Source: Octopus sinensis (taxonomy: Eukaryota). From it: DNA of 64,000 nt. This document shows, piece after piece, positions 9,076 to 48,260 of this stretch; the first letter of the stretch is position 1; each line of letters opens with the position of its first letter. Where the stretch lies: positions 65,100,001-65,164,000 of the forward strand of contig NC_043000.1 of NCBI RefSeq assembly GCF_006345805.1, in the 5' to 3' direction. The position numbers and the translations under genes are program-made. Below the pieces are notes generated by a model. The model worked only from the letters and a program-made list of their open reading frames with translations, was not told the origin of the DNA and ran no database searches.

Positions 9076-9275
9076 CTGAGACAATGTAAAACTAAGGATT
9101 TGTGCTCAGAAACAAAGAAATACTTGCAGCTGGATTGAAATTACGGTCTAAGGCAGCAAGTTGTCCAAAACTTTATGGGCTCAGTTATTTAATTTCTTCG
9201 ACAAGTGGTGTTAATAAATATTAAGTCTTTATTATTGAGATTATCCTGCTTTATACAAAAGTAAATAACAACTTC

Positions 9276-9545
9276 ATGTCAGCCAAATCCATCGTGAAAA
9301 CCGCCTTGCCGCCTTCCTTTGGCGGAGAAGTGCAGGATGTTTTCTTTCGACTAGTGGCTATGGCAAAAATGGTTGCACGGTGGACAAAATTGAAAGGATT
9401 CAGGACAGACACTTACATTCTTCTTCGACCAAACCTTCAGCGACTTATTCAAGTTCTGCAGACCTGCTTGGGGAAGGAAACCATGATTGAGAGGGGGATG
9501 CTGCCATACAGTTTGAAGATGGATGAGAGTGGATGAGAGTGTACA
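9276..9545 (+). mobile_element. C-terminal ORF2 fragment of an L1/Tx1-clade non-LTR retrotransposon
   Basis: SAKSIVKTALPPSF..VFFRLVAMAKMVARWTKLKGFRTDT..ER matches the pattern of Tx1-type ORF2 C-termini (LVAxAKxVxWxTRxKG..ER); frameshifted downstream. Confidence 0.55.
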
Positions 9546-9884
9546 TGAGTCCATTCTATTGGATGGTGAATTTGCCCACCCCCAATAAAGGCCTGTAAGC
9601 CGGATGACACTGCTGTAAGAGTTGCTCTCGACAGTTCAAGTAGTCCTGGATTTGAGATTCCTTGATTGATCTCAATGGCTGTCCTATTGGGATGTCTCCT
9701 GTCATTTCTTTTTCTTATACTGTTGTTTTGCAGTTGATTCTGCGTAAATTCAGAAATCGTCTTTGTACAGGGTTTTGGGGCTAAATTTGACAGCTTGCTT
9801 AAAAGGAAAAGAAAACATAATATCCGATCCAAAATTAAAAGTATTTAAAAAAAAAAAGTATCAACTAAATTATGGCGGAGGAAT

Positions 9885-17760: not shown

Positions 17761-18054
17761 GTCAGTTTGAATGGTGAAATTCCAGAGGAGTGAGATATGA
17801 TTATTTTCAAGTACTGGATGTGGTTTGTGTTCCTACCAGTTTTTATATGGTGGATGAGATTGAAATGGTTTTTCTCTTTGGCCAATCCCTGATGAACTTC
17901 AAGTTTCACTTGAAAAAAAAATGAGGGTAGAGAGGGATGTGTCGTCATCTAGCCAATATACTGAAAGGTGGATGAAAGTGGTGAGAATGGTACGAATGAA
18001 CGGGCATGCCCTGAGTATATGCTTGTAGTTGGAAAAAAAGGACAGGAAAATGTC

Positions 18055-18103: not shown

Positions 18104-18405
18104 GTTATTGTATTATTATTGTTTTTTTTCCTTCTTTCTTCAAATTTTCTTTCATTTCTCGCCGGGTGTTTTCCGTGTACCTAGGGTAGTGAAGCTCATT
18201 GTATGCATTTACAGATTACACTCGCAAATTCACAGGTAAAATATGTATTTAAAAAAATTAATAAATAAATAATTTCATGAATGGATGTTGTTTTCACAGT
18301 GATAATGCTCTTCTCAGTACATGAGTCGTTCCAGTTAACACGAGTTTTTTGCACTTCCTGTAGGGATGGTAATCGAAATATGGGAATTCTTTCGCCGTTG
18401 TATTA

Positions 18406-18483
<78 letters not shown>

Positions 18484-18798
18484 TATTATTATTATTGTTA
18501 TTGTATTATTATTGTTTTTTTTCCTTCTTTCTTCAAATTTTCTTTCATTTCTCGCCGGGTGTTTTCCGTGTACCTAGGGTAGTGAAGCTCATTGTATGCA
18601 TTTACAGATTACACTCGCAAATTCACAGGTAAAATATGTATTTAAAAAAATTAATAAATAAATAATTTCATGAATGGATGTTGTTTTCACAGTGATAATG
18701 CTCTTCTCAGTACATGAGTCGTTCCAGTTAACACGAGTTTTTTGCACTTCCTGTAGGGATGGTAATCGAAATATGGGAATTCTTTCGCCGTTGTATTA

Positions 18799-18842
<44 letters not shown>
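18058..18842. repeat. Direct tandem duplication of a ~395-bp unit bounded by (TAT)n
   Basis: ~18100-18410 is essentially identical to ~18494-18803. Confidence 0.9.
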
Positions 18843-22051: not shown

Positions 22052-23436
22052 GTTGTGCACCTGAAAGAAGGAGTCACCTTCGAGGCATATTACCGAAGAT
22101 TTCAACAAAATTTCGAAAATGAATGCCAAGACAGGACGGACGAAATGAAAACGCGTCTAATTCTGAGGAAACTAGTGACGACAGAGCACGAGAAATACTC
22201 TAACTTTATATTGCCTAAAAAAGTTTCTGACGTAAATTTCACGGACACAATTGACATTTTGTGTATGACGTTTAGTGAGAAAACATCGTTGGTCAACACT
22301 AAGTTTAAACACTGAGAAAAGTGATGACGTAGAATTTACCACATATGCGGGTAGAGTGAATAGAGAAAGCGAGAGATTTAAACTGGATAAACTAACTCCT
22401 GACCCGTTCATGTGCCTGATCTTTGTTCAAGAACTTACTGCTAAAAAGGACGCAGAAGTCAGAATGAAAATTCTCACAAAGCTGGAAATGAATCAGGATA
22501 TAACTCTCCAGAAACTGTCAGGAGAGTGCGATATGATATTAAAAGTAAGACACGAAACAGAAGAAATCCAAAGCAGAGATTGTTTTCAGATAAAACTTGT
22601 GGAAGAGATGGAAGACGGATAAAAGTTTCACAAAAAACACTATATTCAACAGGCGATAATCCCATGTATGGTATGCGGTGGTAGGCACCTGAGAAAAGAG
22701 TGTCCGTTCAAAAAAGCAACGTGTTTTCATTGTGGGAGCACAGTGCACATTAAATCGCACTGACGAAAAACTGGACCAAACGAGAAAAAATAAATAGTTT
22801 GTCGTTAGAGAAAAAAGTTTGCACAACGAACAGAAAATCCATCAAGGTGAGAATCGAAACCACTAGTGTCAAAATGCAATTAGACACGGGTAGTGATATT
22901 ACTATCATAAATGAAGAAACATAGCGACAAATTGGAAAGCCGAAATTATTTAAATCAAATAAAGTAGTATATGGTGTTACAGGAAAGAAATTATATTTTA
23001 TCAGCGAATGTATTTGCAATGTAACTTTTCGAGGTAAAACAAAAAGGGCAATCATTAATGTGATGAAAATATCACTAAACTATTTTGGCACAGAATGCAT
23101 GGAGTTATTTAAAATGTGGGATATCCCCATTAGCGTTCTCTGTGAAAATGTAGTCGGCACGGTGAAAAGTTCGAATGAAGTCGAACAGCTGAGATAAAAA
23201 AATTTTTTAATTGTTTCCAAATGTTTTTTGGGGAAGTATTAGGCTGCATGACACATTCCAGGTACCAACACCGTTACAGGTGGTTGAACCCACGCATACG
23301 AGTGGAAGAAAAAGAACACAGACGCCAAAAGGAAAAAATATCAAGTTGGAAAAAAATCGTTAAAAGGGAGGAGGGGTGAATAAAATAAAATAAAATTACT
23401 TGCTTCCCAAAGAAAAGAAAAAATTAAAAGGAGAGA
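22046..23436 (+). mobile_element. Internally deleted Ty3/Gypsy LTR retrotransposon: gag C-terminus, protease and polypurine tract
   Basis: Gag-like TFEAYYRRFQQNF..KTRLILRKL..EHEKYSNFILPK; two knuckles CMVCGGRHLRKEC and CFHCGSTVHIKSH*; retropepsin MQLDTGSDITII (DTG at 22883-22891); RT/RNaseH/integrase missing; purine tract aaaaggagaga (23426-23436) directly before TGTAGTG. Confidence 0.85.
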
Positions 23437-23520
23437 TGTAGTGAAAATGGTACTCCCCTTCCTACGTATCAAAGTGGTATGGTTCAGCCACTATAAAGGC
23501 AGACAGTCAGTCGTTGTAGG
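23437..23520 (+). mobile_element. Left portion of an interrupted Gypsy LTR (U3 with TATA-like box)
   Basis: Starts TGTAGTG right after the PPT; tataaa at 23492-23497; ends at the 18-bp duplicated site. Confidence 0.65.
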
Positions 23521-23670
23521 AGGTCATTAGTAGGAGAGCGTCTTCGGCTTTTAGTCTTTGAGTGAGTTATTTGGAGTTATTCAGGTGTGATTATTCTGGT
23601 GTGTTTATTTCAAGTGAAGAGGTGGTGAGTTCGAGTTCGTTGGAGGACGTGGAATAATTTTTTCCTGAAA

Positions 23671-24993
23671 ATGCAAGAAGAACAGACTTACGCGCGAGCG
23701 GCAGGCAGAGGCCTGGTTGCCGGTGAGCTGGAAATGGAGGAGGTGGTGGTCGAACAGAAGACTTTACAGAAGTATTTCGACAGTTTAAAGAGGGAGGGTG
23801 ACTGCGTAAGAGTCACACCGTCCGAGGAGGAGGAAAGCAGTGCCGAGAAGCGTACTATAACGTACAGGACGTGGTGTGTGGAGTCCAAAAAAATTGAAGT
23901 GGCGGAAATGAAAGAAGTAGAAGAATGTCTGAAGGAAATTGAGGGCGAACCCACATTTTTCAAAAGAGGAAGGAAGTATGCCACGGTGGTGGTATATTTT
24001 GAAACAGAAAATGAGGCAAAAAAGAACGCAACAAGACTTTTGAAATCGGATAAGTGGACTTTGCTACCAAGTTACTGCGGAAGGAGAGCAGGTGAGGATG
24101 AGAATCAATAGAATCTCACCCGAATTTAATATGGAAAGGTTGCTGGCAGCAGTGCTGTTTAACTGCAAGGATGATGTGGGAGTACTGAAGGTGGAGAAGT
24201 CAGCGGAGGTGAAATGGTGGGGATATACGGTGCAGGTTCTCGCGCACACATTACCCGTGCGACCTGTAAAACATCCCGGAGGAGCTGGTCTACCCTGACG
24301 AGACACGGCTCCGAGTTGTGGTAGAGGGAAGACCCCCAATTTGCTACAATTGTAAATCAAGGGGCACACATGAAGGATGTGTGCCCGCGAGAAAAAACTA
24401 AAGCACGGAGGTTGTGATGGAGGACGTGTGTGTGGAGGAGGCAAAAGCGGAGGAAGTACGAATGGAGGAGCGGTTAAGTGAGGAAGAACGAGAGAGTGCA
24501 GAAGAGGAAAAGACGGAAGACAGGAAGAGATCAAGGGTGGAATCACCACGAAGGATCAAAAAAAGAAGAAAATTAAAAGCAAGATAGCAAGAGAGAGAAG
24601 ACAAAGAGGACAGAAAAAAAGAGAAGGTGAGTGAGAGCGGCCAAGGACAGAGTTTGAAAAAGAATGGGAGACAAGAGTGAACGAGCAATTGGAATCGTGC
24701 AGATATGGAAGAAGGCCTACAGGGAAAAACTTGAAGGCGTTGTTGTATGTATATCAAGAATACAGAAGTGGAGAAGAGACTTGTAGGTAAGAAAGGGTTG
24801 GTCAGGGTGAAGGTGAACCCAAAGCTGTATGGTGACGACGTGAAAGGCGTCATTATAGACAAAGAGACATATATAAACTAAAAAAGATGTTTAATGCCAT
24901 ACAATAACGCATTATGTGCGTTATGATAAATTGCCAGATGTATAAGAGCATACGGACCTGTTGGATTATATGACGGACGAGCGTCTAATGTAA
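23671..24993 (+). pseudogene. ORF1/Gag-like protein, unit 1 (frameshifted as assembled)
   Basis: Near-identical to the intact unit-4 ORF but broken by many 1-3 nt indels, mostly in homopolymers; may be sequencing error. Confidence 0.75.
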
Positions 24994-25407
24994 AAGAATA
25001 GAATTGTAAGATTTAAAGTTGTATTTTGAATATATGTAATGTTGACATGTAGAATTGTAAAATTATTGTAAAGTAAAATTGTATGTATAATTGTATTTTA
25101 AACGGAACTGCGAGTTGGGGGTTCGTAAGCCGTTCCATCTCATTACATCTAAATCATTTTTTACTTCATATTTTATTTTTATTTTATGTACCCCATGTCC
25201 CGTCTTGTAATGTCCCCCTCTTCGTGGCCCTTAGTGGGTAATAAAGAAATAGGTATTAGTAGGAGAGCGTCTTAGGCTTTTAGTCTTTGAGTGAGTATTT
25301 GGAGTTATTCAGGTGTGATTATTCTGGTGTGTTGTATTTCAAGTGAAGAGTGGTGAGGTGGTGAGTTCGACGTTTGGAGGACGTGGAATAATAATTTTTT
25401 CCTGAAA

Positions 25408-26733
25408 ATGCAAGAACAGACTTACGCGCGAGCGGCAGGCAGAGGCCTGGTTGCCGGTGAGCTGGAAATGGAGGAGGTGGTGGTCGAACAGAAGACTTTA
25501 CAGAAGTATTTCGACAGTTTAAAGAGGGAGGGTGACTGCGTAAGAGTCACACGTCAGGAGGAGGAGGAGGAAAGCAGCGAGAGAGAAGCGTACTATAACG
25601 TACAGGACGTGGTGTGTGGAGTCCAAAAAAATTGAAGTGGCGGAAATGAAAGAAGTAGAAGAATGTCTGAAGGAAATTGAGGGCGAACCCACATTTTTCA
25701 AAAGAGGAAGGAAGTATGCCACGGTGGTGGTATATTTTGAAACAGAAAATGAGGCAAAAAAGAACGCAACAAGACTTTTGAAATCGGATAAGTGGACTTT
25801 GCTACCAAGTTACTGCGGAAGGAGAGCAGTGAGGATGAGAATCAATAGAATCTCACCCGAATTTAATATGGAAAGGTTGCTGGCAGCAGTGCTGTTTAAC
25901 TGCAAGGATGATGTGGAGGTACTGAAGGTGGAGAAGTCAGCGGAGGTGAAATGGTGGGGATATACGGTGCAGGTTCTCGCGCACATTACCGTGCGAGACC
26001 TGTACAACATCCCGGAGGAGCTGGTCTACCCTGACGAGACACGGCTCCGAGTTGTGGTAGAGGGAAGACCCCCAATTTGCTACAATTGTAAATCAAGGGG
26101 CCACATGAAGGATGTGTGCCCGCGAGAAAAAACTAAAGCACCGGAGGTTGTGATGGAGGACGTGTGTGTGGAGGAGGCAAAGCGGAGGAAGTACGAATGG
26201 AGGAGCGGTTAAGTGAGAAGAACGAGAGAGTGCAGAGAAGAGGAAAAGACGGAAGACAGGAAGAGATCAAGGGTGGAATCACCACCGAAGGATCAAAAAA
26301 AGAAGAGAAAATTAAAAGCAAGATAGCAGAAAAGAGAGAAGACAAAGAGCACGGAAGTAAAAGAGAAGGTGAGAGAGCGGCCAAGGACAGAGTTTGAAAA
26401 GAATGGGAGACAAGAGTAAACGAGCAATTGGAATCGTGCAGATATGGAAGAAGGCCTACAGGGAAAAACTTGAAGGCGGTTGTAATGTATATCAAGAATA
26501 CAGAAGTGGAGAAGAGACTTGTAGGTAAGAAAGGGTTGGTCAGGGTGAAGGTGAACCCAAAGCTGTATGGTGACGACGTGAAAGGCGTCATTATAGACAA
26601 AGAGACATATATAAAACTAAAAAAGATGTTTAATGCCATACACATAACGCATTATGTGCGGTATGATAAATTGCCAGATGTTATAGAGCATACGGACCTG
26701 TTGGATTATATGACGGACGAGCGTCTAATGTAA
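25408..26733 (+). pseudogene. ORF1/Gag-like protein, unit 2 (frameshifted as assembled)
   Basis: ORF fragments 25408-25635, 25616-26212 and 26428-26733 tile the unit-4 protein. Confidence 0.75.
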
Positions 26734-27144
26734 AAGAATCAGAATTGTAAGATTTAAAGTTGTATTTTGAATATATGTAATGTTGACATGTAGAATTGTA
26801 AAATTATTGTAAATGTAAAATTGTATGTATAATTGTATTTTAAACGGAACTGCGAGTTGGGGGTTCGTAAGCCGTTCCATCTCATTACATCTAATTCATT
26901 TTTTACTTCATATTTTATTTTTATTTTATGTACCCCATGTCCCGTCTTGTAATGTCCCCCTCTTCGTGGCCCCTTAGTGGGTAATAAAGAAATAGGTCAT
27001 TAGTAGGAGAGCGTCTTAGGCTTTTAGTCTTTGAGTGAGTTATTTGGAGTTATTCAGGTGTGATTATTCTGGTGTGTTTATTTCAAGTGAAGAGGTGGTG
27101 AGTTCGAGTTCGTTGGAGGACGTGGAATAATTTTTTTCCTGAAA

Positions 27145-28464
27145 ATGCAAGAACAGACTTACGCGCGAGCGGCAGGCAGAGGCCTGGTTGCCGGTGAGCT
27201 GGAAATGGAGGAGGTGGTGGTCGAACAGAAGACTTTACAGAAGTATTTCGACAGTTTAAAGAGGGAGGGTGACTGCGTAAGAGTCACACCGTCCGAGGAG
27301 GAGGAAAGCAGTGCCGAGAAGCGTACTATAACGTACAGGACGTGGTGTGTGGAGTCCAAAAAAATTGAAGTGGCGGAAATGAAAGAAGTAGAAGAATGTC
27401 TGAAGGAAATTGAGGGCGAACCCACATTTTTCAAAAGAGGAAGGAAGTATGCCACGGTGGTGGTATATTTTGAAACAGAAAATGAGGCAAAAAAAAAGAA
27501 CGCAACAAGACTTTTGAAATCGGATAAGTGGACTTTGCTACCAAGTTACTGCGGAAGAGAGCAGTGAGGATGAGAATCAATAGAATCTCACCCGAATTTA
27601 ATATGGAAAGGTTGCTGGCAGCAGTGCTGTTTAACTGCAAGGATGATGTGGAGGTACTGAAGGTGGAGAAGTCAGCGGAGGTGAAATGGTGGGGATATAC
27701 GGTGCAGGTTCTCGCGCACATTACCGTGCGAGACCTGTACAACATCCCGGAGGAGCTGGTCTACCCTGACGAGACACGGCTCCGAGTTGTGGTAGAGGGA
27801 AGACCCCCAATTTGCTACAATTGTAAATCAAGGGGCCACATGAAGGATGTGTGCCCGCGAGAAAAAACTAAAGCACCGGAGGTTGTGATGGAGGACGTGT
27901 GTGTGGAGAGGCAAAAGCGGAGGAAGTACGAATGGAGGAGCGGTTAAGTGAGGAAGAACGAGAGAGTGCAGAAGAGGAAAAGACGGAAGACAGGAAGAGA
28001 TCAAGGGTGGAATCACCACCGAAGGATCAAAAAAAGAAGAAAATTAAAAGCAAGATAGCAGAAGAGAGAGAAGACAAAGAACAGGAAGTAAAAGAGAAGG
28101 TGAGAGAGCGGCCAAGGACAGAGTTTGAAAAAGAATGGGAGACAAGAGTAAACGAGCAATTGGAATCGTGCAGATATGGAAGAAGGCCTACAGGGAAAAA
28201 CTTGAAGGCGGTTGTAATGTATATCAAGAATACAGAAGTGGAGAAGAGACTTGTAGGTAAGAAAGGGTTGGTCAGGGTGAAGGTGAACCCAAAGCTGTAT
28301 GGTGACGACGTGAAAGGCGTCATTATAGACAAAGAGACATATATTAAACTAAAAAAGGATGTTTATGCCATACACATAACGCATTATGTGCGGTATGATA
28401 AATGCCAGATGTTATAGAGCATACGGACCTGTTGGATTATATGACGGACGAGCGTCTAATGTAA
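27145..28464 (+). pseudogene. ORF1/Gag-like protein, unit 3 (frameshifted as assembled)
   Basis: ORF fragments 27145-27567, 27528-27947 and 27899-28417 tile the unit-4 protein. Confidence 0.75.
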
Positions 28465-28871
28465 AAGAATCAGAATTGTAAGATTTAAAGTTGTATTTTG
28501 AATATATGTAATGTTGACATGTAGAATTGTAAAATTATTGTAAATGAAATTGTATGTATAATTGTATTTTAAACGGAACTGCGAGTTGGGGGTTCGTAAG
28601 CCGTTCCATCTCATACATCTAATTCATTTTTTACTTCATATTTTATTTTTATTTTATGTACCCCATGTCCCGTCTTGTAATGTCCCCCTCTTCGTGGCCC
28701 CTTAGTGGGTAATAAAGAAATAGGTCATAGTAGGAGAGCGTCTTAGGCTTTTAGTCTTTGAGTGAGTTATTTGGAGTTATTCAGGTGTGATTATTCTGGT
28801 GTGTTTATTTCAAGTGAAGAGGTGGTGAGTTCGAGTTCGTTGGAGGACGTGGAATAATTTTTTTCCTGAAA

Positions 28872-30191
28872 ATGCAAGAACAGACTTACGCGCGAGCGGC
28901 AGGCAGAGGCCTGGTTGCCGGTGAGCTGGAAATGGAGGAGGTGGTGGTCGAACAGAAGACTTTACAGAAGTATTTCGACAGTTTAAAGAGGGAGGGTGAC
29001 TGCGTAAGAGTCACACCGTCCGAGGAGGAGGAAAGCAGTGCAGAGAAGCGTACTATAACGTACAGGACGTGGTGCGTGGAGTCGAAAAAAATTGAAGTGG
29101 CGGAAATGGAAGAAGTAGAAAAGTGTCTGAAGGAAATTGAGGGTGAACCCACATTTTTCAAAAGAGGAAAGAAGTATGCCACGGTAGTGGTATATTTTGA
29201 AACAGAAAATGAGGCAAAAAAGAACGCAACAAGACTTTTGAAATCGGATAAGTGGACTTTGCTACCAAGTTACTGCGGAAGGAGGGCAGTGAGGATGAGA
29301 ATCAATAGAATCTCACCCGAATTTAATATGGAAAGGTTGCTGGCAGCAGTGCTGTTTAACTGCAAGGATGATGTGGAAGTACTGAAGGTGGAGAAGTCAG
29401 CGGAGGTGAAATGGTGGGGATATACGGTGCAGGTTCTCGCGCACATTACCGTGCGAGACCTGTACAACATCCCGGAGGAGCTGGTCTACCCTGACGAGAC
29501 ACGGCTCCGAGTTGTGGTAGAGGGAAGACCCCCAATTTGCTACAATTGTAAGTCGAGGGGCCACATGAAGGATGTGTGCCCGCGAGAAAAAACTAAAGCA
29601 CCGGAGGTTGTGATGGAGGACGCGTGTGTGGAGGAGGCGAAAGCGGAGGAAATACGAATGGAGGAGCGGTTAAGTGAGGAAGAACGAGAGAGTGCAGAAG
29701 AGGAAAAGACGGAAGACAGGAAGAGATCAAGGGTGGAATCACCACCGAAGGATCAAAAAAAGAAGAAAATTAAAAGCAAGATAGCAGAAGAGAGAGAAGA
29801 CAAAGAACAGGAAGTAAAAGAGAAGGCGAGAGAGCGGCCAAGGACAGAGTTTGAAAAAGAATGGGAGACAAGAGTGAACGAGCAATTGGAATCGTGCAGA
29901 TATGGAAGAAGGCCTACAGGAAAAAACTTGAAGGCGGTTGTAATGTATATCAAGAATACAGAAGTGGAGAAGAGACTTGTAGGTAAGAAAGGGCTGGTCA
30001 GGGTGAAGGTGAACCCAAAGCTGTATGGTGACGACGTGAAAGGCGTCATTATAGACAAAGAGACATATATAAAACTAAAAAAGATGTTTAATGCTATGCA
30101 CATAACGCACTATGTGCGGTATGATAAATTGCCAGATGTTATAGAGCATACGGACCTGTTGGATTATATGACGGACGAGCGTCTAATGTAA
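28872..30191 (+). CDS. Intact 439-aa L1/Tx1-type ORF1 (Gag-like) nucleic-acid-binding protein
   Basis: TYARAA N-terminal motif; RRM-like segments (..KRGKKYATVVVYFETENEAKK..; RMRINRISPEF..); IPEEL..RLRVVVEGRPPICYNCKSRGHMKDVCP with a CX2CX4HX4C knuckle at 29538-29579; E/K-rich linker; basic C-terminal domain; no RT or endonuclease motifs. Confidence 0.85.
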   Translation: MQEQTYARAAGRGLVAGELEMEEVVVEQKTLQKYFDSLKREGDCVRVTPSEEEESSAEKRTITYRTWCVESKKIEVAEMEEVEKCLKEIEGEPTFFKRGKKYATVVVYFETENEAKKNATRLLKSDKWTLLPSYCGRRAVRMRINRISPEFNMERLLAAVLFNCKDDVEVLKVEKSAEVKWWGYTVQVLAHITVRDLYNIPEELVYPDETRLRVVVEGRPPICYNCKSRGHMKDVCPREKTKAPEVVMEDACVEEAKAEEIRMEERLSEEERESAEEEKTEDRKRSRVESPPKDQKKKKIKSKIAEEREDKEQEVKEKARERPRTEFEKEWETRVNEQLESCRYGRRPTGKNLKAVVMYIKNTEVEKRLVGKKGLVRVKVNPKLYGDDVKGVIIDKETYIKLKKMFNAMHITHYVRYDKLPDVIEHTDLLDYMTDERLM

Positions 30192-30451
30192 AAGAATCAG
30201 AATTATAAGATTTAAAGTTGTATTTTGAATATATGTAATGTTGACATGTAGAATTGTAAAATTATTGTAAATGTAAAATTGTATGTATAATTGTATTTTA
30301 AACGGAACTGCGAGTTGGGGGCTCGTAAGCCGTTCCATCTCATTACATCTAATTCATTTTTTACTTCATATTTTATTTTACTCTATGTACCCCATGTCCC
30401 GTCGTGTAATGTCCCCCTCTTCGTGGCCCCTTAGTGGGTAATAAAAAAACA

Positions 30452-31366
30452 GGAAGGAGAGCAGTGAGGATGAGAATCAATAGAATCTCACCCGAATTTA
30501 ATATGGAAAGGTTGCTGGCAGCAGTGCTGTTTAACTGCAAGGATGATGTGGAGGTACTGAAGGTGGAGAAGTCAGCGGAGGTGAAATGGTGGGGATATAC
30601 GGTGCAGGTTCTCGCGCACATTACCGTGCGAGACCTGTACAACATCCCGGAGGAGCTGGTCTACCCTGACGAGACACGGCTCCGAGTTGTGGTAGAGGGA
30701 AGACCCCCAATTTGCTACAATTGTAAATCAAGGGGCCACATGAAGGATGTGTGCCCGCGAGAAAAAACTAAAGCACCGGAGGTTGTGATGGAGGACGTGT
30801 GTGTGGAGGAGGCAAAAGCGGAGGAAGTACGAATGGAGGAGCGGTTAAGTGAGGAAGAACGAGAGAGTGCAGAAGAGGAAAAGACGGAAGACAGGAAGAG
30901 ATCAAGGGTGGAATCACCACCGAAGGATCAAAAAAAGAAGAAAATTAAAAGCAAGATAGCAGAAGAGAGAGAAGACAAAGAACAGGAAGTAAAAGAGAAG
31001 GTGAGAGAGCGGCCAAGGACAGAGTTTGAAAAAGAATGGGAGACAAGAGTGAACGAGCAATTGGAATCGTGCAGATATGGAAGAAGGCCTACAGGGAAAA
31101 ACTTGAAGGCGGTTGTAATGTATATCAAGAATACAGAAGTGGAGAAGAGACTTGTAGGTAAGAAAGGGTTGGTCAGGGTGAAGGTGAACCTAAAGCTGTA
31201 TGGTGACGACGTGAAAGGCGTCATTATAGACAAAGAGACATATATAAAACTAAAAAAGATGTTTAATGCTATGCACATAACGCACTATGTGCGGTATGAT
31301 AAATTGCCAGATGTTATAGAGCATACGGACCTGTTGGATTATATGACGGACGAGCGTCTAATGTAA
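30452..31366 (+). pseudogene. 5'-truncated ORF1, unit 5 (frame open to the stop)
   Basis: Begins at ggaaggagagcag (codon ~135 of the full ORF) and runs open to the same stop. Confidence 0.8.
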
Positions 31367-31623
31367 AAGAATCAGAATTATAAGATTTAAGTTGTATTTT
31401 GAATATATGTAATGTTGACATGTAGAATTGTAAAATTATTGTAAATGTAAAATTGTATGTATAATTGTATTTTAAACGGAACTGCGAGTTGGGGGTCGTA
31501 AGCCGTTCCATCTCATTACATCTAATTCATTTTTTACTTCATATTTTATTTTACTCTATGTACCCCATGTCCCGTCGTGTATGTCCCCCTCTTCGTGGCC
31601 CCTTAGTGGGTAATAAAAAAACA

Positions 31624-32533
31624 GGAAGGAGAGCAGTGAGGATGAGAATCAATAGAATCTCACCCGAATTTAATATGGAAAGGTTGCTGGCAGCAGTGCT
31701 GTTTAACTGCAAGGATGATGTGGAGGTACTGAAGGTGGAGAAGTCAGCGGAGGTGAAATGGTGGGGATATACGGTGCAGGTTCTCGCGCACATTACCGTG
31801 CGAGACCTGTACAACATCCCGGAGGAGCTGGTCTACCCTGACGAGACACGGCTCCGAGTTGTGGTAGAGGGAAGACCCCCAATTTGCTACAATTGTAAAT
31901 CAAGGGGCCACATGAAGGATGTGTGCCCGCGAGAAAAAACTAAAGCACCGGAGGTTGTGATGGAGGACGTGTGTGTGGAGGAGGCAAAAGCGGAGGAAGT
32001 ACGAATGGAGGAGCGGTTAGTGAGGAAGAACGAGAGAGTGCAGAAGAGGAAAAGACGGAGACAGGAAGAGATCAAGGGTGGAATCACCACCGAAGGATCA
32101 AAAAAAGAAGAAAATTAAAAGCAAGATAGCAGAAGAGAGAGAAGACAAAGAACAGGAAGTAAAAGAGAAGGTGAGAGCGGCCAAGGACAGAGTTTGAAAA
32201 AGAATGGGAGACAAGAGTGAACGAGCAATTGGAATCGTGCAGATATGGAAGAAGGCCTACAGGGAAAAACTTGAAGGCGGTTGTAATGTATATCAAGAAT
32301 ACAGAAGTGGAGAGAGACTTGTAGGTAAGAAAGGGTTGGTCAGGGTGAAGGTGAACTAAAGCTGTATGGTGACGACGTGAAAGGCGTCATTATAGACAAA
32401 GAGACATATATAAAACTAAAAAAGATGTTTAATGCCATAACACATAACGCATTATGTGCGGTATGATAAATTGCCAGATGTTATAGAGCATACGGACCTG
32501 TTGGATTATATGACGGACGAGCGTCTAATGTAA
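31624..32533 (+). pseudogene. 5'-truncated ORF1, unit 6 (frameshifted as assembled)
   Basis: Same truncation point as unit 5; several 1-nt indels. Confidence 0.75.
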
Positions 32534-32811
32534 AAGAATCAGAATTGTAAGATTTAAAGTTGTATTTTGAATATATGTAATGTTGACATGTAGAATTGTA
32601 AAATTATTGTAAATGTAAAATTGTATGTATAATTGTATTTTAAACGGAACTGCGAGTTGGGGGTTCGTAAGCCGTTCCATCTCATTACATCTAATTCATT
32701 TTTTACTTCATATTTTATTTTTATTTTATGTACCCCATGTCCCGTCTTGTAATGTCCCCCTCTTCGTGGCCCCTTAGTGGGTAATAAAGAAATAGGTCAT
32801 TAGTAGGAGAG

Positions 32812-32962: not shown

Positions 32963-35342
32963 TAATAGTGGCGACAAGAATATTAAAGTGCCTACAATAA
33001 CATACAAGTGGACGAGGATCCACATTATAACAGTTATATCGACCCTTATTATATTGATTTGTTGACTTGTACTTATTTCATCATCCCAGCAAAGGTGATC
33101 TCGGCGGGATTAGAACTAAGAACATGAGTAGTAACTAAATATTACAACATTTTTGATTGCTGCTCTAGCGTTTCTGCTAATCACATAGAACGCTAACAGC
33201 AATGTACCGCAATATCGCTCATCTTACCACTCCCTCACCATCTTTAACAACAAAATGTTAGCGGATAATTCAGATATTTTTCATTGAAGCGAACTTATTT
33301 GGAAATCGAATGGCGTTTTTTGTTTCACATCACCGAACTGTTATTTATAATATTGCATTTCTGCAGAAAGATTGTACTGTAAAATGTAAGCACTCACCGT
33401 CGTGTAAGATACACCACTCATAAAAGAACAGTTTGATGGAGAGAAAATATTGTAGCAACCTTATTTAAATGTGCATTATTGTTTTTGTGAGAATGTAAAA
33501 CAAAATGATTTTGACTTTAGAGAAATTAAATAAAATATTTTCCCCATTAGAATGTAACAGTATTCAATGATTGTTGCTTTTATTATGTAAACATAATTCT
33601 TAAGCGCTCGCTATTACATTTCTTACAAGAAGAATGCCATTACCACAACTGAAAGAACCGGTGTTTTAATGTTGTTATAATGCGTTTTTTATGTTATTAT
33701 ATCAAGCAATGATGGTAGAGCTACGCTAGTTTTAAACATTTCACTTTAAGGTTAGATTCTCTTTCTTATGTCCTTTGTATCTGTATCCACATTTAGTTTA
33801 AATATATAAAAAAAACATGTTCTACACCTCCATTTACCTTCAAAACAAATTCAGTTTAATTGAGTTCTATGTTGTTGTTCTAAAGAACAGGAATTTATAT
33901 TTCAAAAACAAATATTAAACTTTTCTATTCAAAGAGATATTATCGTCTTTATCTGAGCCGAAGAATTATTGACATGCTTCTTTGCAGATAAAGGCACCGT
34001 AATCTGAAACGATTAAAAGAATATTAAATGTCACAAGCAATGGCAGCATTGCAGTGTAACTCAGTGGTTTCCACCTAAGTGATTCGCAGAAAATAAAATC
34101 TTTTTACTTTTGAAATTCATGCTAAAATGCAAAATGTTTGTAAATATGTTATACAATAAGCCATAGACATAAGGGCTACAGCGTATTTACTGTTAACAAA
34201 AAAACGGGATTATTTCTCCATGACAAGTATGGAATACTTTTTAAAATGCAATAGAAGTTTATCGCTAAGACAAAAACTGGTGGCGACAGTAAACGTGTGG
34301 CGACAGTAAACGGGTGGGAACTATTGATGCATCATATTCTATTGCTTATCACTTAATTTCGCTATTCTTTCTTCTATCTTTACTCTCTGCACCATTTCTT
34401 CTCGATATGGTACTGCACCATTAGTTCATGATATGATACTGAAGCAAAACAGTGGTAAGCTTAATAGTCATCCAGTTTAACACCGTTACACGACAGTTGA
34501 GGGCTTTCAGAAGAGTTCACTTTGTAGCAAGCATTCGAGCTAGAACTCCACTCTAAGGATAACCAACCAATAAGTCTTGTTTTCACCTACTCTTTTTCCA
34601 ATCAGTCTTGGAGGTCCAGCAAACAGGTCATGAGAGCTACCTTTCATCATCAGACAAAAATCATTAAAAATAAAAACTGATATGGAAATTGGTTATCATC
34701 TAACTTAACTGTACACCACATCAGTTACACAGCAATAATAGCATCGTGTATCCCGATTGAAGAGAATTACAAGATGTAATTAGACATTACGCGCGTAAGA
34801 ATTATAACAGCGGTGAATTGTAAGAGCCATTAGAGCATAGAATAAAATGCATCGCAGTATTTCTTCCGACTCTCTGCGTTCTGAATGAGTTAAGATCTCG
34901 CCGAGGTCAATTTACCTCTCGCTCTTCCTGAATCGATAAAAATTACCAATCTCGAACGGTGGATTGTCAGAACGTCGGAAGATGTCAAGTTGTATCGACG
35001 CTTGCCTTACCTTTTTTCTCAGGCAACATCGGTAGCATAAAAAGGCGAGACTAGTGTGCATAGACAACTCGATAGTCTTCCACAAAACAAATTCGGTAAA
35101 GTCTTGGCATGCGCATAAATGTGTGGTACAAGGTTGACGGTGGCTTTAGAATTTTGGTATTCCTAATAAGTAGAAGTTTGACTCAGTTATTTTTGTTGCT
35201 GCTGTTTTAAAAAGGTAAATGAAATTTCGTTCAATTGTGGGAAGATATGTTATTTAATTGAAAATGCTTTTAAATGGCCAAGTAGGAATATGTAAACTTT
35301 TCTATTTCGGTAACAGATAACTACATTAGGACAATCAAATGT

Positions 35343-47049: not shown

Positions 47050-47410
47050 TGCTTCGTTACATGCTTTTGGTGATATCTTGTGGAAGGTTTCGATCCTGCG
47101 CTGCCATCCAGATTTCCTCGGTTTCAGTTATTTGTTCCGCATTTCTTTTCTCAGCTACTGTTGTGAATTTTCTTCGTCTGCTTCCGTTCAGTTCAATCTT
47201 TTCAAGTATCAGCTATGTACCTTTTTTAATCATGATATTATCTAGTCATATTTTAATTTTCTCTTTTGACCTTTCAACAATTTCTGTTGTTAGTCTTCCT
47301 TTTTCTTCTTACTTAACATTTTGCTTTTGTCTGTCTGGTAGCCATGGCAAAAGAGGCTGCGTAGTGGACAGGACTGAAAGGGCTGAAGACAGATGTTTTT
47401 CTCTCTAGCC
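47050..47410 (-). mobile_element. Possible decayed 5' UTR + ORF1 start of a non-LTR element related to the array unit
   Basis: Minus strand gagag..gtcttcagccctttcagtc resembles the array 5' end gagagcgtcttcggcttttagtc; followed by gccATG and a stop-ridden E/K-rich frame. Confidence 0.3.
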
Positions 47411-47774
47411 CAAGCGCTCAACTTTTTCAGGTTTCATTTGAAACGAAAACTGAGGGTAGAGAGAAAAGTGTCATATTCCAGTAAATTTGTTGAGCGGTGG
47501 ATGAGAGTGGCAAGCATATTACAAGAGAACGGACCCGCTCTGAGCATGCGCTTTTAGATTGAAAAAGAAATGAATAGGAAAAGCGGCTGCCTAAGTGGTC
47601 AGAGTGATTACTTTTGGTGGGATTTCCACGAGTAACTCTCGGAGGTCCTCCTATTGGGGAATTTTCATTGTTTAAAATTTTATTACCTCTTTGGTTTTAT
47701 TATAAATTTGTGTACCTGTAAAAAAAACCTGTTTTGCTGTCTTGTACCAATGTTTTTTGCATCTTTTAAGTTGA

Positions 47775-48260
47775 TTGTATCTTTCATCTTTCGGGGTCGA
47801 TTAAATAAGTACCTGTTGAGCACTGGGGTCGATGTAATCAACTTATCCCCTCCTCAATATTTCAGGCCTTGTGCCTATTGTAGAAAGCATTATTAAGATG
47901 GTTAGCTGGCCGAATCAGTAGAGTGTCGGACAAAATGCTTATTGGCATTCGTTTAGGCTCTTCATATTCTGAGCTCAAATCTCACCGAAGTTAGCTTTGT
48001 CTTTCATTCTTTTGGTGTCAATTGAATAAGTACCAGTGAAGTACTGGGGTCGATGTAATAGACTTGTCAACTCCCCTCTAAATAGCTGGCCTTGAGCCAA
48101 AATTACAAAAACATATTGCAAAGGCGGCGAGTTGGAAAATTTTTTAAAGTGTCAAAAAATTTTTTATTTGGTATTCATTCGGTATCCTTCCAGCTCTTTA
48201 CGGTCTTATTTCAAATCCTACTGAGGTCAAGCTTGCCTTTCATTCCTTCGGAAACGATCA
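47775..48260 (+). mobile_element. Cluster of three degenerate tRNA-derived SINE copies
   Basis: Repeated ggggtcgat..aagtacc, tgagctcaaatctc, ggcggcgagttgg motifs. Confidence 0.75.

What the first reader, a model, noticed from the sequence alone, without database searches (positions are those of the whole stretch)
23521..32811. Tandem array of an ORF1-only (RT-less) L1/Tx1-like retroelement with the target sequence regenerated at each full-length junction
Seen: a ~1.72-kb unit (short 5' UTR, single 439-aa ORF, 3' UTR ending AATAAA plus a short A-rich tail) repeated head-to-tail six times. The pattern is T-unit-T-unit-T-unit-T-unit...T with T = aggtcattagtaggagag, and the flanks resume unrelated LTR sequence, so T behaves like a 17-18-bp target-site duplication. 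No unit contains RT or endonuclease. Established: the V..EG.P.C-X2-C-X4-H-X4-C context is typical of L1/Tx1 ORF1; TSDs of this length suit L1/Tx1 integration; Xenopus Tx1L targets another transposon; ORF1-only derivatives exist (HAL1), as do Gag-only head-to-tail arrays (Drosophila HeT-A, telomeric). Inference: a non-autonomous protein-coding element that re-inserts at its own regenerated target, building an interstitial HeT-A-like array. I do not know of this arrangement described in cephalopods.
Basis: partly seen in the sequence, partly recalled or inferred. Interest (0 to 1): 0.88.

Follow-up and report, generated by a model that had tools for sequence, protein, structure and literature searches.

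The report
Octopus ORF1-only LINE tandem array
A stretch of octopus DNA carries six head-to-tail copies of a small retrotransposon that kept only the RNA-binding gene of its parent LINE; it is a real and previously undescribed family, but the way the array formed (repeat insertion at one site plus unequal recombination) is already known from other transposons.

Summary
Window 23521-32811 contains four full units of about 1.73 kb and two units cut at the same 5' point. An 18-nt sequence T sits at both ends of the array and at every full-length junction. It is absent from the two truncated junctions.

The 439-aa protein is a LINE ORF1 protein: tandem RRMs, a CCHC knuckle, a coiled coil and a small C-terminal domain. 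In Octopus sinensis and O. vulgaris, and on two unattributed short-read contigs, its homologues lie directly upstream of an endonuclease or a full endonuclease/RT/zf-RVT ORF2. The last 50-100 nt of the unit match the 3' tail of an autonomous octopus LINE and of an abundant SINE. Related ORF1-only copies occur singly, one with a 19-20-nt target-site duplication, so T reads as a target-site duplication.

The array is not a pure product of serial re-insertion. Unit 5 is a clean recombinant of units 4 and 6, which is the signature of unequal crossover. Unit 4 differs from the others by 29 substitutions under purifying selection (omega 0.13-0.25), which suggests a second, independent insertion.

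Head-to-tail arrays recur in this LINE group, including an array of full-length autonomous copies. The closest precedents are HAL1, tandem Tx1-mobilised SINEU-3 copies sandwiching a TSD, and the double-insertion-plus-unequal-exchange model. I rate it a new variant of a known kind, of moderate interest.

The parts
22830..23105 (+). Left flank: degraded LTR-retrotransposon protease (DTGSD motif). A gag-like CCHC lies just upstream at ~22680-22760.
   Evidence: Pfam RVP 21.3 bits against a cutoff of 20.7. Sequence read.
23362..23520 (+). Polypurine tract AAAAGGGAGGAGGGG (23362-23376), then TG... (23377), read as the putative start of an LTR. TATAAAG lies at 23492-23498, 23-29 nt upstream of T.
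   Evidence: Read directly. No second LTR copy exists in the window, so the LTR identity is inferred.
23521..23538 (+). T copy 1 (AGGTCATTAGTAGGAGAG), the left boundary of the array. The true TSD is probably 16 nt, GTCATTAGTAGGAGAG, because the family tail ends in ...AAATAG.
23521..25250 (+). U1, a full-length A-type unit. Its frame is broken by 22 small indels.
25251..26993 (+). U2, a full-length A-type unit. It starts with T lacking one C (25251-25267) and has 16 indels.
26994..28721 (+). U3, a full-length A-type unit. It starts with an exact T (26994-27011) and has 8 indels.
28722..30450 (+). U4, a full-length B-type unit. It starts with T lacking one T (28722-28738). It has 29 substitutions (26 transitions) and 2 indels relative to the consensus.
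28872..30191 (+). The only intact ORF, 439 aa, a Type-I-like ORF1p. Layout: N-terminal helices, RRM1 (~61-135), RRM2 (~137-217), CCHC knuckle (222-237), charged coiled coil (~250-343), small alpha/beta C-terminal domain (~357-405).
30192..30452 (+). 3' UTR of U4 with the LINE/SINE-type tail ...GTCCCCCTCTTCGTGGCCCCTTAGTGGGTAATAAA(A/G)AAA(C/T)AG. AATAAA lies 5 nt from the end.
30451..31622 (+). U5t, 5'-truncated at unit position ~556 and joined directly to the U4 tail with no T. It is a recombinant: the 5' part is like U6t and the 3' part is like U4, with the switch between consensus positions 1296 and 1375.
31623..32793 (+). U6t, with the same 5' truncation point and an A-type 3' end.
32794..32811 (+). 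Terminal T copy. Unrelated flank follows (TCCTTGTACGAG...), with a PBS-like TGGCGACAAG near 32971.

Best explanation
The unit is a non-autonomous, protein-coding LINE derivative that retains only three parts of an octopus L1/Tx1-like LINE: the 5' UTR, ORF1 (tandem RRM + CCHC + coiled coil + C-terminal domain) and the 3' UTR with its tail.

Proposed life cycle (inferred):
- The unit's RNA is bound by its own ORF1p.
- It is copied by the ORF2 protein of an autonomous relative that recognises the shared 3' tail.
- Target-primed reverse transcription starts at a nick just 5' of GT..., and a second nick 16-20 nt downstream produces the target-site duplication.

Proposed history at this locus (inferred):
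- An element landed about 145 nt into a putative LTR, just downstream of its TATA box, and duplicated T.
- The downstream T copy still carries the nick site, so at least one more element of a diverged lineage (B-type U4) entered the same site. This gave a T-sandwiched tandem.
- A 5'-truncated copy was added at the last T, or was created by a deletion.
- Unequal crossover between the 1.7-kb units then changed the copy number, producing U5t and probably the near-identical U1-U3.

What is shown: homology to ORF1 of autonomous LINEs, tail sharing, TSDs in relatives, the recombinant unit, and the signature of purifying selection.
What is inferred: trans-mobilisation, reuse of the nick site, and the order of events.
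For: Protein identity:
- An exhaustive phmmer search finds 385 homologues (96 with E<1e-10), and the 20 best looked up are mostly Octopus bimaculoides, O. sinensis or O. vulgaris proteins, the rest unnamed Logan or MetaClust entries.
- Homologous ORF1s sit directly upstream of ORF2 in four loci. L006 has Exo_endo_phos, RVT_1 (E=4e-16) and zf-RVT. L012 shows ORF2-wide similarity to L006. L002 has an EN after ORF1. L001 has an ORF2 start, MALLKVGSINVRGL, 35 nt after the ORF1 stop.
- An AF2 model built with an MSA has pLDDT above 90 over residues ~30-230. Foldseek top hits are tandem-RRM proteins such as IMP3 RRM12 and SFPQ/NONO (prob ~1, E~1e-4). The CCHC residues are invariant in alignment A2.

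Shared 3' tail:
- A conserved tail motif runs through the unit, the SINE, the autonomous LINEs in L012 and L006, and the ORF1-only copies in L008, L009 and L010.
- The unit's last ~109 nt are 72% identical to the L012 LINE 3' UTR. The alignment score is 82 against 31+/-6 for shuffles.

Mobility of ORF1-only relatives:
- L009 is a single copy with a ~19-20-nt TSD and no EN/RT within 10 kb.
- L007 is a 5'-truncated single copy.
- A SINE with the same tail has a 17-nt TSD.
- The targets all begin with GT.

Array history:
- U5t shares none of U4's 10 private sites upstream of position ~1300, nearly all of U4's ~10 downstream sites, and the truncation point of U6t.
- U4 differs from the consensus of the other units by 14 synonymous and 7 non-synonymous codon changes. 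pN/pS is 0.13, with P=7e-6, or P=0.002 under a transitions-only null.

Precedent:
- Double insertion with the TSD in the junction followed by unequal exchange is described in PMC5932611.
- Tandem Tx1-mobilised SINEU-3 copies sandwiching a TSD, and Tx1 families that target LTR elements, are described in PMC4494074.
Against: - No empty copy of the flanking LTR could be examined, so T has not been shown to occur once in the uninserted target.
- The three sampled relatives with scorable TSDs use unrelated targets apart from starting with GT. Two or more hits on one 16-nt site therefore need either a hotspot or some homing effect that has not been demonstrated.
- The A/B divergence could instead come from gene conversion or from selection acting in situ.
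- Indel noise means that copy number and the T variants may contain assembly errors.
- The partner LINE's clade (Tx1 or L1) was not resolved by phylogeny.
Confidence: 0.6

Rival explanations
1. There was a single insertion with a TSD, and the whole array then grew only by unequal crossover or replication slippage. The difference between U4 and the other units arose in place.
For: U5t is a clean recombinant. U1-U3 are identical apart from indel noise. Both truncated units share one junction. The sampled relatives show no strong target specificity.
Against: The first duplication would have to use only 16-18 nt of homology. The U4-versus-rest divergence shows purifying selection (omega 0.13-0.25), which is not expected for neutral in-place decay. 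In O. bimaculoides, one array (L008) mixes two subfamilies that share no detectable nucleotide similarity apart from a single ~48-nt 3'-UTR match, although assembly gaps hide the junction between them. That composition cannot come from one insertion.
Confidence: 0.2
2. The array is a pure product of serial re-insertion, the first reader's HeT-A-like model. Every unit is a separate retrotransposition into the regenerated T.
For: T lies at both ends and at all full-length junctions. Every 3' tail abuts the same position. Arrays recur in this LINE group: L008, L010 and the autonomous array in L012.
Against: U5t and U6t have an identical truncation point, and U5t is a U6t/U4 chimera with a single switch point. 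That cannot be produced by independent insertions. No T lies between U4, U5t and U6t.
Confidence: 0.08
3. The array is a tandemly duplicated host gene family derived from ORF1, a domesticated gene like L1TD1, and not a mobile element.
For: There is purifying selection. Gene models exist in NCBI annotations of three octopus species. Tandem organisation is seen at several loci.
Against: The unit carries the LINE/SINE 3' tail. Relatives have TSDs and 5' truncations. The array sits inside an LTR-like remnant and has no introns. Many homologues are fragments or chimeric predictions with WD40, LDLa or RGS domains. Purifying selection is also expected for an element that needs its own ORF1p.
Confidence: 0.05
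4. The copy number is an assembly artefact, an over-expanded or mis-joined repeat in a noisy long-read assembly.
For: Differences between the near-identical units are dominated by indels, while the one unit rich in substitutions is clean. Related arrays in O. bimaculoides are full of assembly gaps.
Against: Four structurally distinct unit types are present (A full, B full, A/B hybrid truncated, A truncated), each with its own junction. A simple collapse or expansion cannot produce that. Only the number of U1-U3-type copies is at risk.
Confidence: 0.07

Closest known systems
HAL1 (half-L1) of mammals
   Same: A non-autonomous LINE derivative that keeps ORF1 and the 3' end, has lost ORF2, and is presumably mobilised in trans. 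HAL1 is mentioned in PMC5753468 and PMC4161310; the details rest on my own knowledge of Bao & Jurka 2010.
   Different: HAL1 derives from mammalian L1 with a Type II ORF1p (coiled coil-RRM-CTD) and a poly(A) tail. This family has a Type-I-like ORF1p (two RRMs + CCHC) and a specific 3' tail without poly(A), shared with a SINE. It is an independent origin in cephalopods. HAL1 is not known for arrays.
Tx1-clade target-specific LINEs and their SINEs (Tx1-Mar/SINEU-3; Kibi, Koshi, Keno)
   Same: Tandem copies sandwich a 16-nt TSD, explained by sequential insertion. Some Tx1 families prefer LTR retrotransposons, and microsatellite targeting occurs (PMC4494074). The related octopus LINE in L006 is flanked by (ATT)n on both sides. 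RRM + CCHC ORF1 variants are typical of Tx1 (PMC5203782).
   Different: The tandem element here encodes a protein rather than being a SINE. Strict target specificity was not seen in the sampled copies. Clade membership of the partner RT was not tested.
Double insertion plus unequal exchange as the origin of TE tandems and satellites (R1 array of D. melanogaster; McGurk & Barbash 2018, PMC5932611)
   Same: The TSD is retained in the head-to-tail junction. Tail-to-internal junctions arise from 5'-truncated copies. Later expansion is by unequal exchange.
   Different: This is a different organism and element. The array is short (six units) and its units keep a selected ORF.
Drosophila HeT-A/TART/TAHRE telomeric arrays
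   Same: A Gag/ORF1-only element depends on a relative's RT and forms head-to-tail arrays.
   Different: HeT-A arrays are terminal, have no TSDs, attach to chromosome ends and serve telomere maintenance. This array is interstitial, TSD-bounded, and sits inside another transposon.

Membership tests
LINE ORF1p, Type I (RRM + CCHC) of the L1/Tx1 group | At least one RRM followed by a CCHC zinc knuckle | tested here: met
   The AF2 model built with an MSA is confident over residues ~30-230, with two beta-alpha-beta-beta-alpha-beta modules. Foldseek top hits are tandem-RRM proteins. C-X2-C-X4-H-X4-C lies at residues 222-237, and C162, C165, H170 and C175 of A2 are (near-)invariant. Pfam zf-CCHC scores only 18.7 bits, below the 20.8 cutoff.
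LINE ORF1p, Type I (RRM + CCHC) of the L1/Tx1 group | Homologues encoded immediately upstream of an APE-endonuclease/RT ORF2 | tested here: met
   Seen in L006, L012, L002 and L001.
Tx1 clade (as opposed to L1 proper) | RT-domain phylogeny places the partner LINE inside Tx1 | not testable with these tools
   No reference RT set (Repbase) is available. Only EEP + RVT_1 + zf-RVT domains and an (ATT)n-flanked copy point to the L1/Tx1 group.
Tx1 clade (as opposed to L1 proper) | Sequence-specific target use by independent copies | tested here: not met
   The TSDs of sampled relatives differ: GCTGGGTTCG... in L009, GGTTATGATGTTTCGGC and GTATTTCTA for SINEs, and T here. The only shared feature is a GT start. 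The sample is very small.
ORF1-only non-autonomous LINE derivative (HAL1-like) | ORF1 present, ORF2 absent, 3' end shared with an autonomous LINE | tested here: met
   There is no EN/RT similarity in any unit or within 10 kb in L007-L011. The tail and the last ~100 nt of the 3' UTR are shared with the L012 LINE.
ORF1-only non-autonomous LINE derivative (HAL1-like) | Dispersed copies with TSDs and 5' truncation, as evidence of retrotransposition | tested here: met
   L009 has a 19-20-nt TSD. L007 is a 5'-truncated copy. The copies examined are from related subfamilies, not this exact one.
HAL1 proper | Derived from mammalian L1 with a Transposase_22 (Type II) ORF1 | tested here: not met
   There is no Transposase_22 hit. 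The architecture is RRM-RRM-CCHC. This element is therefore an analogue of HAL1, not a member.
TE tandem formed by double insertion + unequal exchange | TSD retained in the head-to-tail junction and at both array ends | tested here: met
TE tandem formed by double insertion + unequal exchange | Evidence of unequal exchange between units | tested here: met
   U5t is a single-switch chimera of U6t (5' part) and U4 (3' part).
TE tandem formed by double insertion + unequal exchange | Target present once in the empty site | not testable with these tools
   There is no second copy of the LTR in the window or in 160 kb of other octopus loci. No octopus genome could be searched by nucleotide.
HeT-A-like telomeric array | Terminal location, no TSD, role in end maintenance | tested here: not met
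   The array is interstitial, with unique flanks on both sides and a TSD.

The most novel reading that the evidence does not exclude
This octopus LINE group, both its autonomous members and the ORF1-only derivatives, has an intrinsic homing habit. New copies are primed at the tail/TSD boundary of resident copies, through reuse of the retained nick site or through pairing of read-through RNA with the duplicated target. Interstitial HeT-A-like arrays of protein-coding units would then arise repeatedly across the genome, sometimes mixing subfamilies. They would supply a selected pool of RRM-CCHC protein.
Probability: 0.25. Interest if true: 0.7.

Novelty: new variant of a known kind. Interest (0 to 1): 0.45.

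Why it matters
This would be a second, independent example after mammalian HAL1 of a LINE that survives as an ORF1-only parasite of its own relatives. In this case it has a Type-I ORF1p and a SINE-like tail that the RT is likely to recognise specifically. It would also be a worked case of a protein-coding retroelement at the first steps from dispersed repeat to tandem array.

In the small sample taken here, 3 of 6 ORF1-only loci are arrays (the window, L008 and L010, against single copies in L007, L009 and L011), and one locus holds an array of full-length autonomous LINEs. That makes octopus genomes a candidate system for asking whether tandem formation is driven by the element or by the host.

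There is also a practical point. These arrays are places where octopus assemblies break or stay unpolished, and where ORF1 fragments get annotated as host genes or fused to them.

Tried and rejected
- Word-indexed protein searches found nothing with the full protein or a full-length profile beyond one hit, because the E/K-rich region swamps the word index. A trimmed N-terminal profile gave only 5 short hits.
- Sequence search of the PDB gave only a marginal CCHC hit, and single-sequence AF2 was uninformative (pLDDT 37).
- An exact-protein look-up of the 439-aa product found no record.
- A sensitive BLAST found no second copy of the flanking LTR in the window, and none in 160 kb of other octopus loci. 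Two exact-pattern scans of metagenome contigs, one for the empty site and one for the tail, found nothing. The empty-site test therefore could not be done.
- I considered that T might be the R region of the LTR, with the array made by R-mediated template switching of an LTR-type RT. I rejected this. The unit has no PBS or PPT, it carries a LINE/SINE tail, and relatives have ordinary TSDs.
- I considered microhomology (AGGAGAGC in both T and the unit at position ~560) as the source of the truncated junction. The observed junction keeps only AGG/GG of T, so that 8-mer was not the joint.
- Alignment of the 5' UTRs of related arrays was too divergent to delimit spacers equivalent to T in L008, L010 or L012. 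The right ends of those arrays lie in assembly gaps.

Full report
**1. The observation**

A BLAST of one unit against the window gives six collinear, same-strand copies that abut one another from 23521 to 32796, plus an 18-nt stub at 32794-32811. The repeat finder agrees, with spacings of ~1.73 kb three times and ~1.17 kb twice.

Four units are full length (U1-U4). The last two (U5t, U6t) begin at the same internal position, unit position ~556, which is codon ~136.

The 18-mer T (AGGTCATTAGTAGGAGAG) is exact at the left edge, at the U2/U3 junction and at the right edge, where 0 matches are expected by chance. It carries a single-base deletion at U1/U2 and at U3/U4. At the two truncated junctions there is no T. 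The tail ...AATAAAAAAACA is joined through GG to internal sequence.

Only U4 carries the intact 439-aa ORF (28872-30191). No other ORF of 200 aa or more exists anywhere in the 64-kb window outside the array.

**2. Quality of the sequence**

Realigning each unit to the consensus shows that U1, U2, U3, U5t and U6t differ from it almost only by 1-3-nt indels. The counts are 22, 16, 8, 4 and 6 events, several of them in compensating pairs a few bases apart.

U4 has 29 substitutions (26 transitions) and just 2 indels. The consensus of the units is an intact 439-aa ORF.

My reading, which is inference, is that the near-identical copies could not be polished and carry long-read noise. U4 is distinguishable by its SNVs and was polished. 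The frameshifts, the two "mutated" T copies and the exact number of U1-U3-type units should be treated as uncertain.

The array as such is not an artefact. It contains four structurally different unit types, each with its own junction.

**3. What the protein is**

Pfam sees only a sub-threshold zinc knuckle, and word-indexed searches fail.

An exhaustive phmmer search finds 385 homologues, 96 of them below 1e-10. The best of these are uncharacterised proteins of Octopus bimaculoides, O. sinensis and O. vulgaris. The long ones are chimeric gene models with WD40, LDL-receptor or RGS domains, as expected for transposon fragments inside host genes.

Genomic context settles the identity:
- In O. 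sinensis (L006), the homologous ORF1 is followed by an Exo_endo_phos endonuclease, an RT (RVT_1, E=4e-16; motifs FDRVDH, QGCPLS, YADD) and a zf-RVT domain.
- In O. vulgaris (L012), ORF1 is followed by the same ORF2.
- A Logan contig (L002) has an EN after ORF1.
- An ENA contig (L001) has an ORF2 start, MALLKVGSINVRGL..., 35 nt after the ORF1 stop.

With an alignment of homologues, AlphaFold gives a confident model (pLDDT above 90 over residues ~30-230). Its best PDB matches are tandem-RRM proteins.

The architecture is two RRMs, a CCHC knuckle, a charged coiled coil and a small C-terminal domain. This is the Type I ORF1p pattern that the literature associates with plant L1 and the animal Tx1 group (PMC5203782).

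**4. Why it is a retroelement and not just a gene**

The last ~50 nt of the unit (...GTCCCCCTCTTCGTGGCCCCTTAGTGGGTAATAAAGAAATAG) match the 3' tail of four other kinds of element:
- an abundant tRNA-like SINE, at window 63232-63001 and twice in L007;
- the autonomous LINE of L012;
- the LINE of L006, more loosely;
- other ORF1-only elements.

The last ~109 nt of the 3' UTR align to the L012 LINE 3' UTR at 72% identity, well above shuffled controls.

Related ORF1-only copies exist as ordinary dispersed insertions:
- L009 (O. vulgaris) is a single copy bounded by a 19-20-nt duplication, with no EN or RT within 10 kb.
- L007 (O. sinensis) is a 5'-truncated copy with its own 3' UTR and tail.

A SINE with the same tail has a 17-nt duplication. 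All these targets begin with GT directly after ...AAATAG, as T does. The true duplication here is therefore probably the 16-mer GTCATTAGTAGGAGAG.

Taken together, the unit is an ORF1-only, HAL1-like derivative that depends on a relative's ORF2. T has the length and position of a target-site duplication of this machinery. The direct proof, one T in an empty copy of the target, could not be obtained.

**5. The flanks**

The left flank carries four LTR-retrotransposon features:
- a gag-like CCHC;
- a retropepsin remnant (RVP, just above the Pfam cutoff);
- a purine tract followed by TG at 23377;
- a TATAAAG 23-29 nt upstream of T.

The array therefore lies ~145 nt into what looks like an LTR, at about its expected transcription start. 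No second LTR copy is in the window, so this is plausible but unproven. Tx1 families that prefer LTR retrotransposons are on record (PMC4494074).

**6. How the array formed**

Two signals point in different directions.

(a) Recombination. U5t lacks all ten U4-private substitutions between positions 556 and ~1300. It shares nearly all ~10 U4-private sites from 1375 to the end, including the tail variant AAAAAAACAG. It also shares its truncation point and two private sites with U6t. That is the reciprocal product of one unequal crossover between U4 and U6t. Not every unit is an insertion.

(b) Independent insertion. U4 differs from the consensus of the others at 14 synonymous and 7 non-synonymous codons. 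pN/pS is 0.13, with P=7e-6, or P=0.002 under a transitions-only null where omega is ~0.25. Copies decaying in place should not show this. Two lineages of an element that needs its ORF1p would.

The most economical history is the published two-step route. Double insertion at one site leaves the TSD in the junction, and unequal exchange follows. That route is described for the R1 array and many Drosophila TEs in PMC5932611, and for tandem SINEU-3 copies sandwiching a TSD in PMC4494074.

The tail-to-internal U4|U6t junction is either a 5'-truncated insertion at the last T with almost no duplication, or a later deletion.

**7. Arrays recur in this LINE group**

- In O. bimaculoides, L008 has a unit's tail running straight into the next unit's 5' UTR and start codon. 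It also has a third copy of a different subfamily in the same orientation, separated from the second by an assembly gap.
- L010 has two units of that second subfamily head to tail.
- In O. vulgaris, L012 holds at least three full-length autonomous LINEs head to tail, with a 5.28-kb period and 99% identity.
- The window's own SINE at 63 kb is followed directly by a truncated SINE.

The sample is small: seven genomic loci chosen by protein hits, plus the window. Several array ends lie in assembly gaps. The frequency, and the mixed-subfamily array, still suggest that insertion next to a resident copy is favoured.

Reuse of the retained nick site is one possible reason. Another rests on the position of AATAAA, which lies 5 nt from the tail end. 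Transcripts probably run into the downstream T before being cleaved, so pairing of that read-through RNA with the duplicated target is possible. Both are hypotheses. Against strict site specificity, the sampled copies use unrelated targets.

**8. Comparison with known systems and novelty**

The element works like HAL1 but is not a member. It has no Transposase_22 ORF1, it has a different tail, and it has an independent origin.

The array works like R1 or SINEU-3 tandems and the double-insertion model. It only superficially resembles HeT-A, because it is interstitial, TSD-bounded and non-terminal.

I found no description of ORF1-only LINE derivatives or of such arrays in cephalopods. The octopus LINE paper I read deals with RTE elements (PMC9115989). 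I therefore rate it a new variant of a known kind. It is a solid, moderately interesting transposon finding rather than a new mechanism.

**9. Verdict**

- The proposed mechanism is partly supported: some re-insertion is likely, recombination is certain, and homing is unproven.
- The copy number and the broken frames need long-read confirmation.

Noticed in passing
window 63232-62883 (- strand): A full 232-nt tRNA-like SINE with the same 3' tail as the unit is followed directly, head to tail, by a 5'-truncated copy of the same SINE (positions 50-166, 90% identity). This is a tail-to-internal tandem like U4|U5t.
   Followed up: partly
window 9249-9560, 17822-18013, 47326-47554 (+): Three fragments of a LINE ORF2 C-terminus (zf-RVT region, 37-69% identity to the L006 ORF2). 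The third is followed at ~47760-47890 by a 3' UTR that contains the SINE core (GGGGTCGATTAAATAAGTACC...) and a tail-like end. The SINE body and tail therefore derive from this LINE group.
   Followed up: partly
window 18107-18449 and 18500-18842: A perfect (100%) 343-nt direct repeat with a 393-nt period. It could be a very recent tandem duplication or an assembly artefact.
   Followed up: no
window 23362-23498: A polypurine tract plus TG (like a PPT and LTR start), and a TATAAAG 23-29 nt upstream of the first T. The array begins about where the LTR's transcription start would be, so U1 could be driven by the LTR promoter.
   Followed up: partly
window ~32971 and 34274-34317: A PBS-like TGGCGACAAG lies ~160 nt right of the array. 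A related motif, TGGCGACAGTAAACG, is repeated 2.6 times at 34274-34317. Their meaning is unclear.
   Followed up: no
L012 4441-19184 (O. vulgaris OX597840.1, ~31.87 Mb): At least three full-length autonomous LINEs (ORF1, EN, RT, zf-RVT) lie head to tail with a 5.28-kb period and 99% identity. Their tail is nearly the same as the unit's. The right end is lost in a 100-N gap.
   Followed up: partly
L006 9720-15400 (O. sinensis CM016872.1): An autonomous LINE of the same group is flanked on both sides by (ATT)n microsatellite. The L001 contig's 5' end is also preceded by ATTATTATT. This is a microsatellite-targeting habit like that of Tx1.
   Followed up: partly
L008 11441-11774, 12688-13280, 14590-15153; L010 9037-9358: Assembly gaps (N runs) in O. 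bimaculoides fall exactly inside ORF1-only tandem arrays. ORF1 fragments there are annotated as 'uncharacterized protein' genes.
   Followed up: no
window 28722-30450 (U4) versus the other units: 26 of the 29 substitutions that separate U4 from the other units are transitions (A>G 7, G>A 8, T>C 9, C>T 2). I did not test whether this reflects ordinary mutation bias or RNA editing captured by reverse transcription.
   Followed up: no
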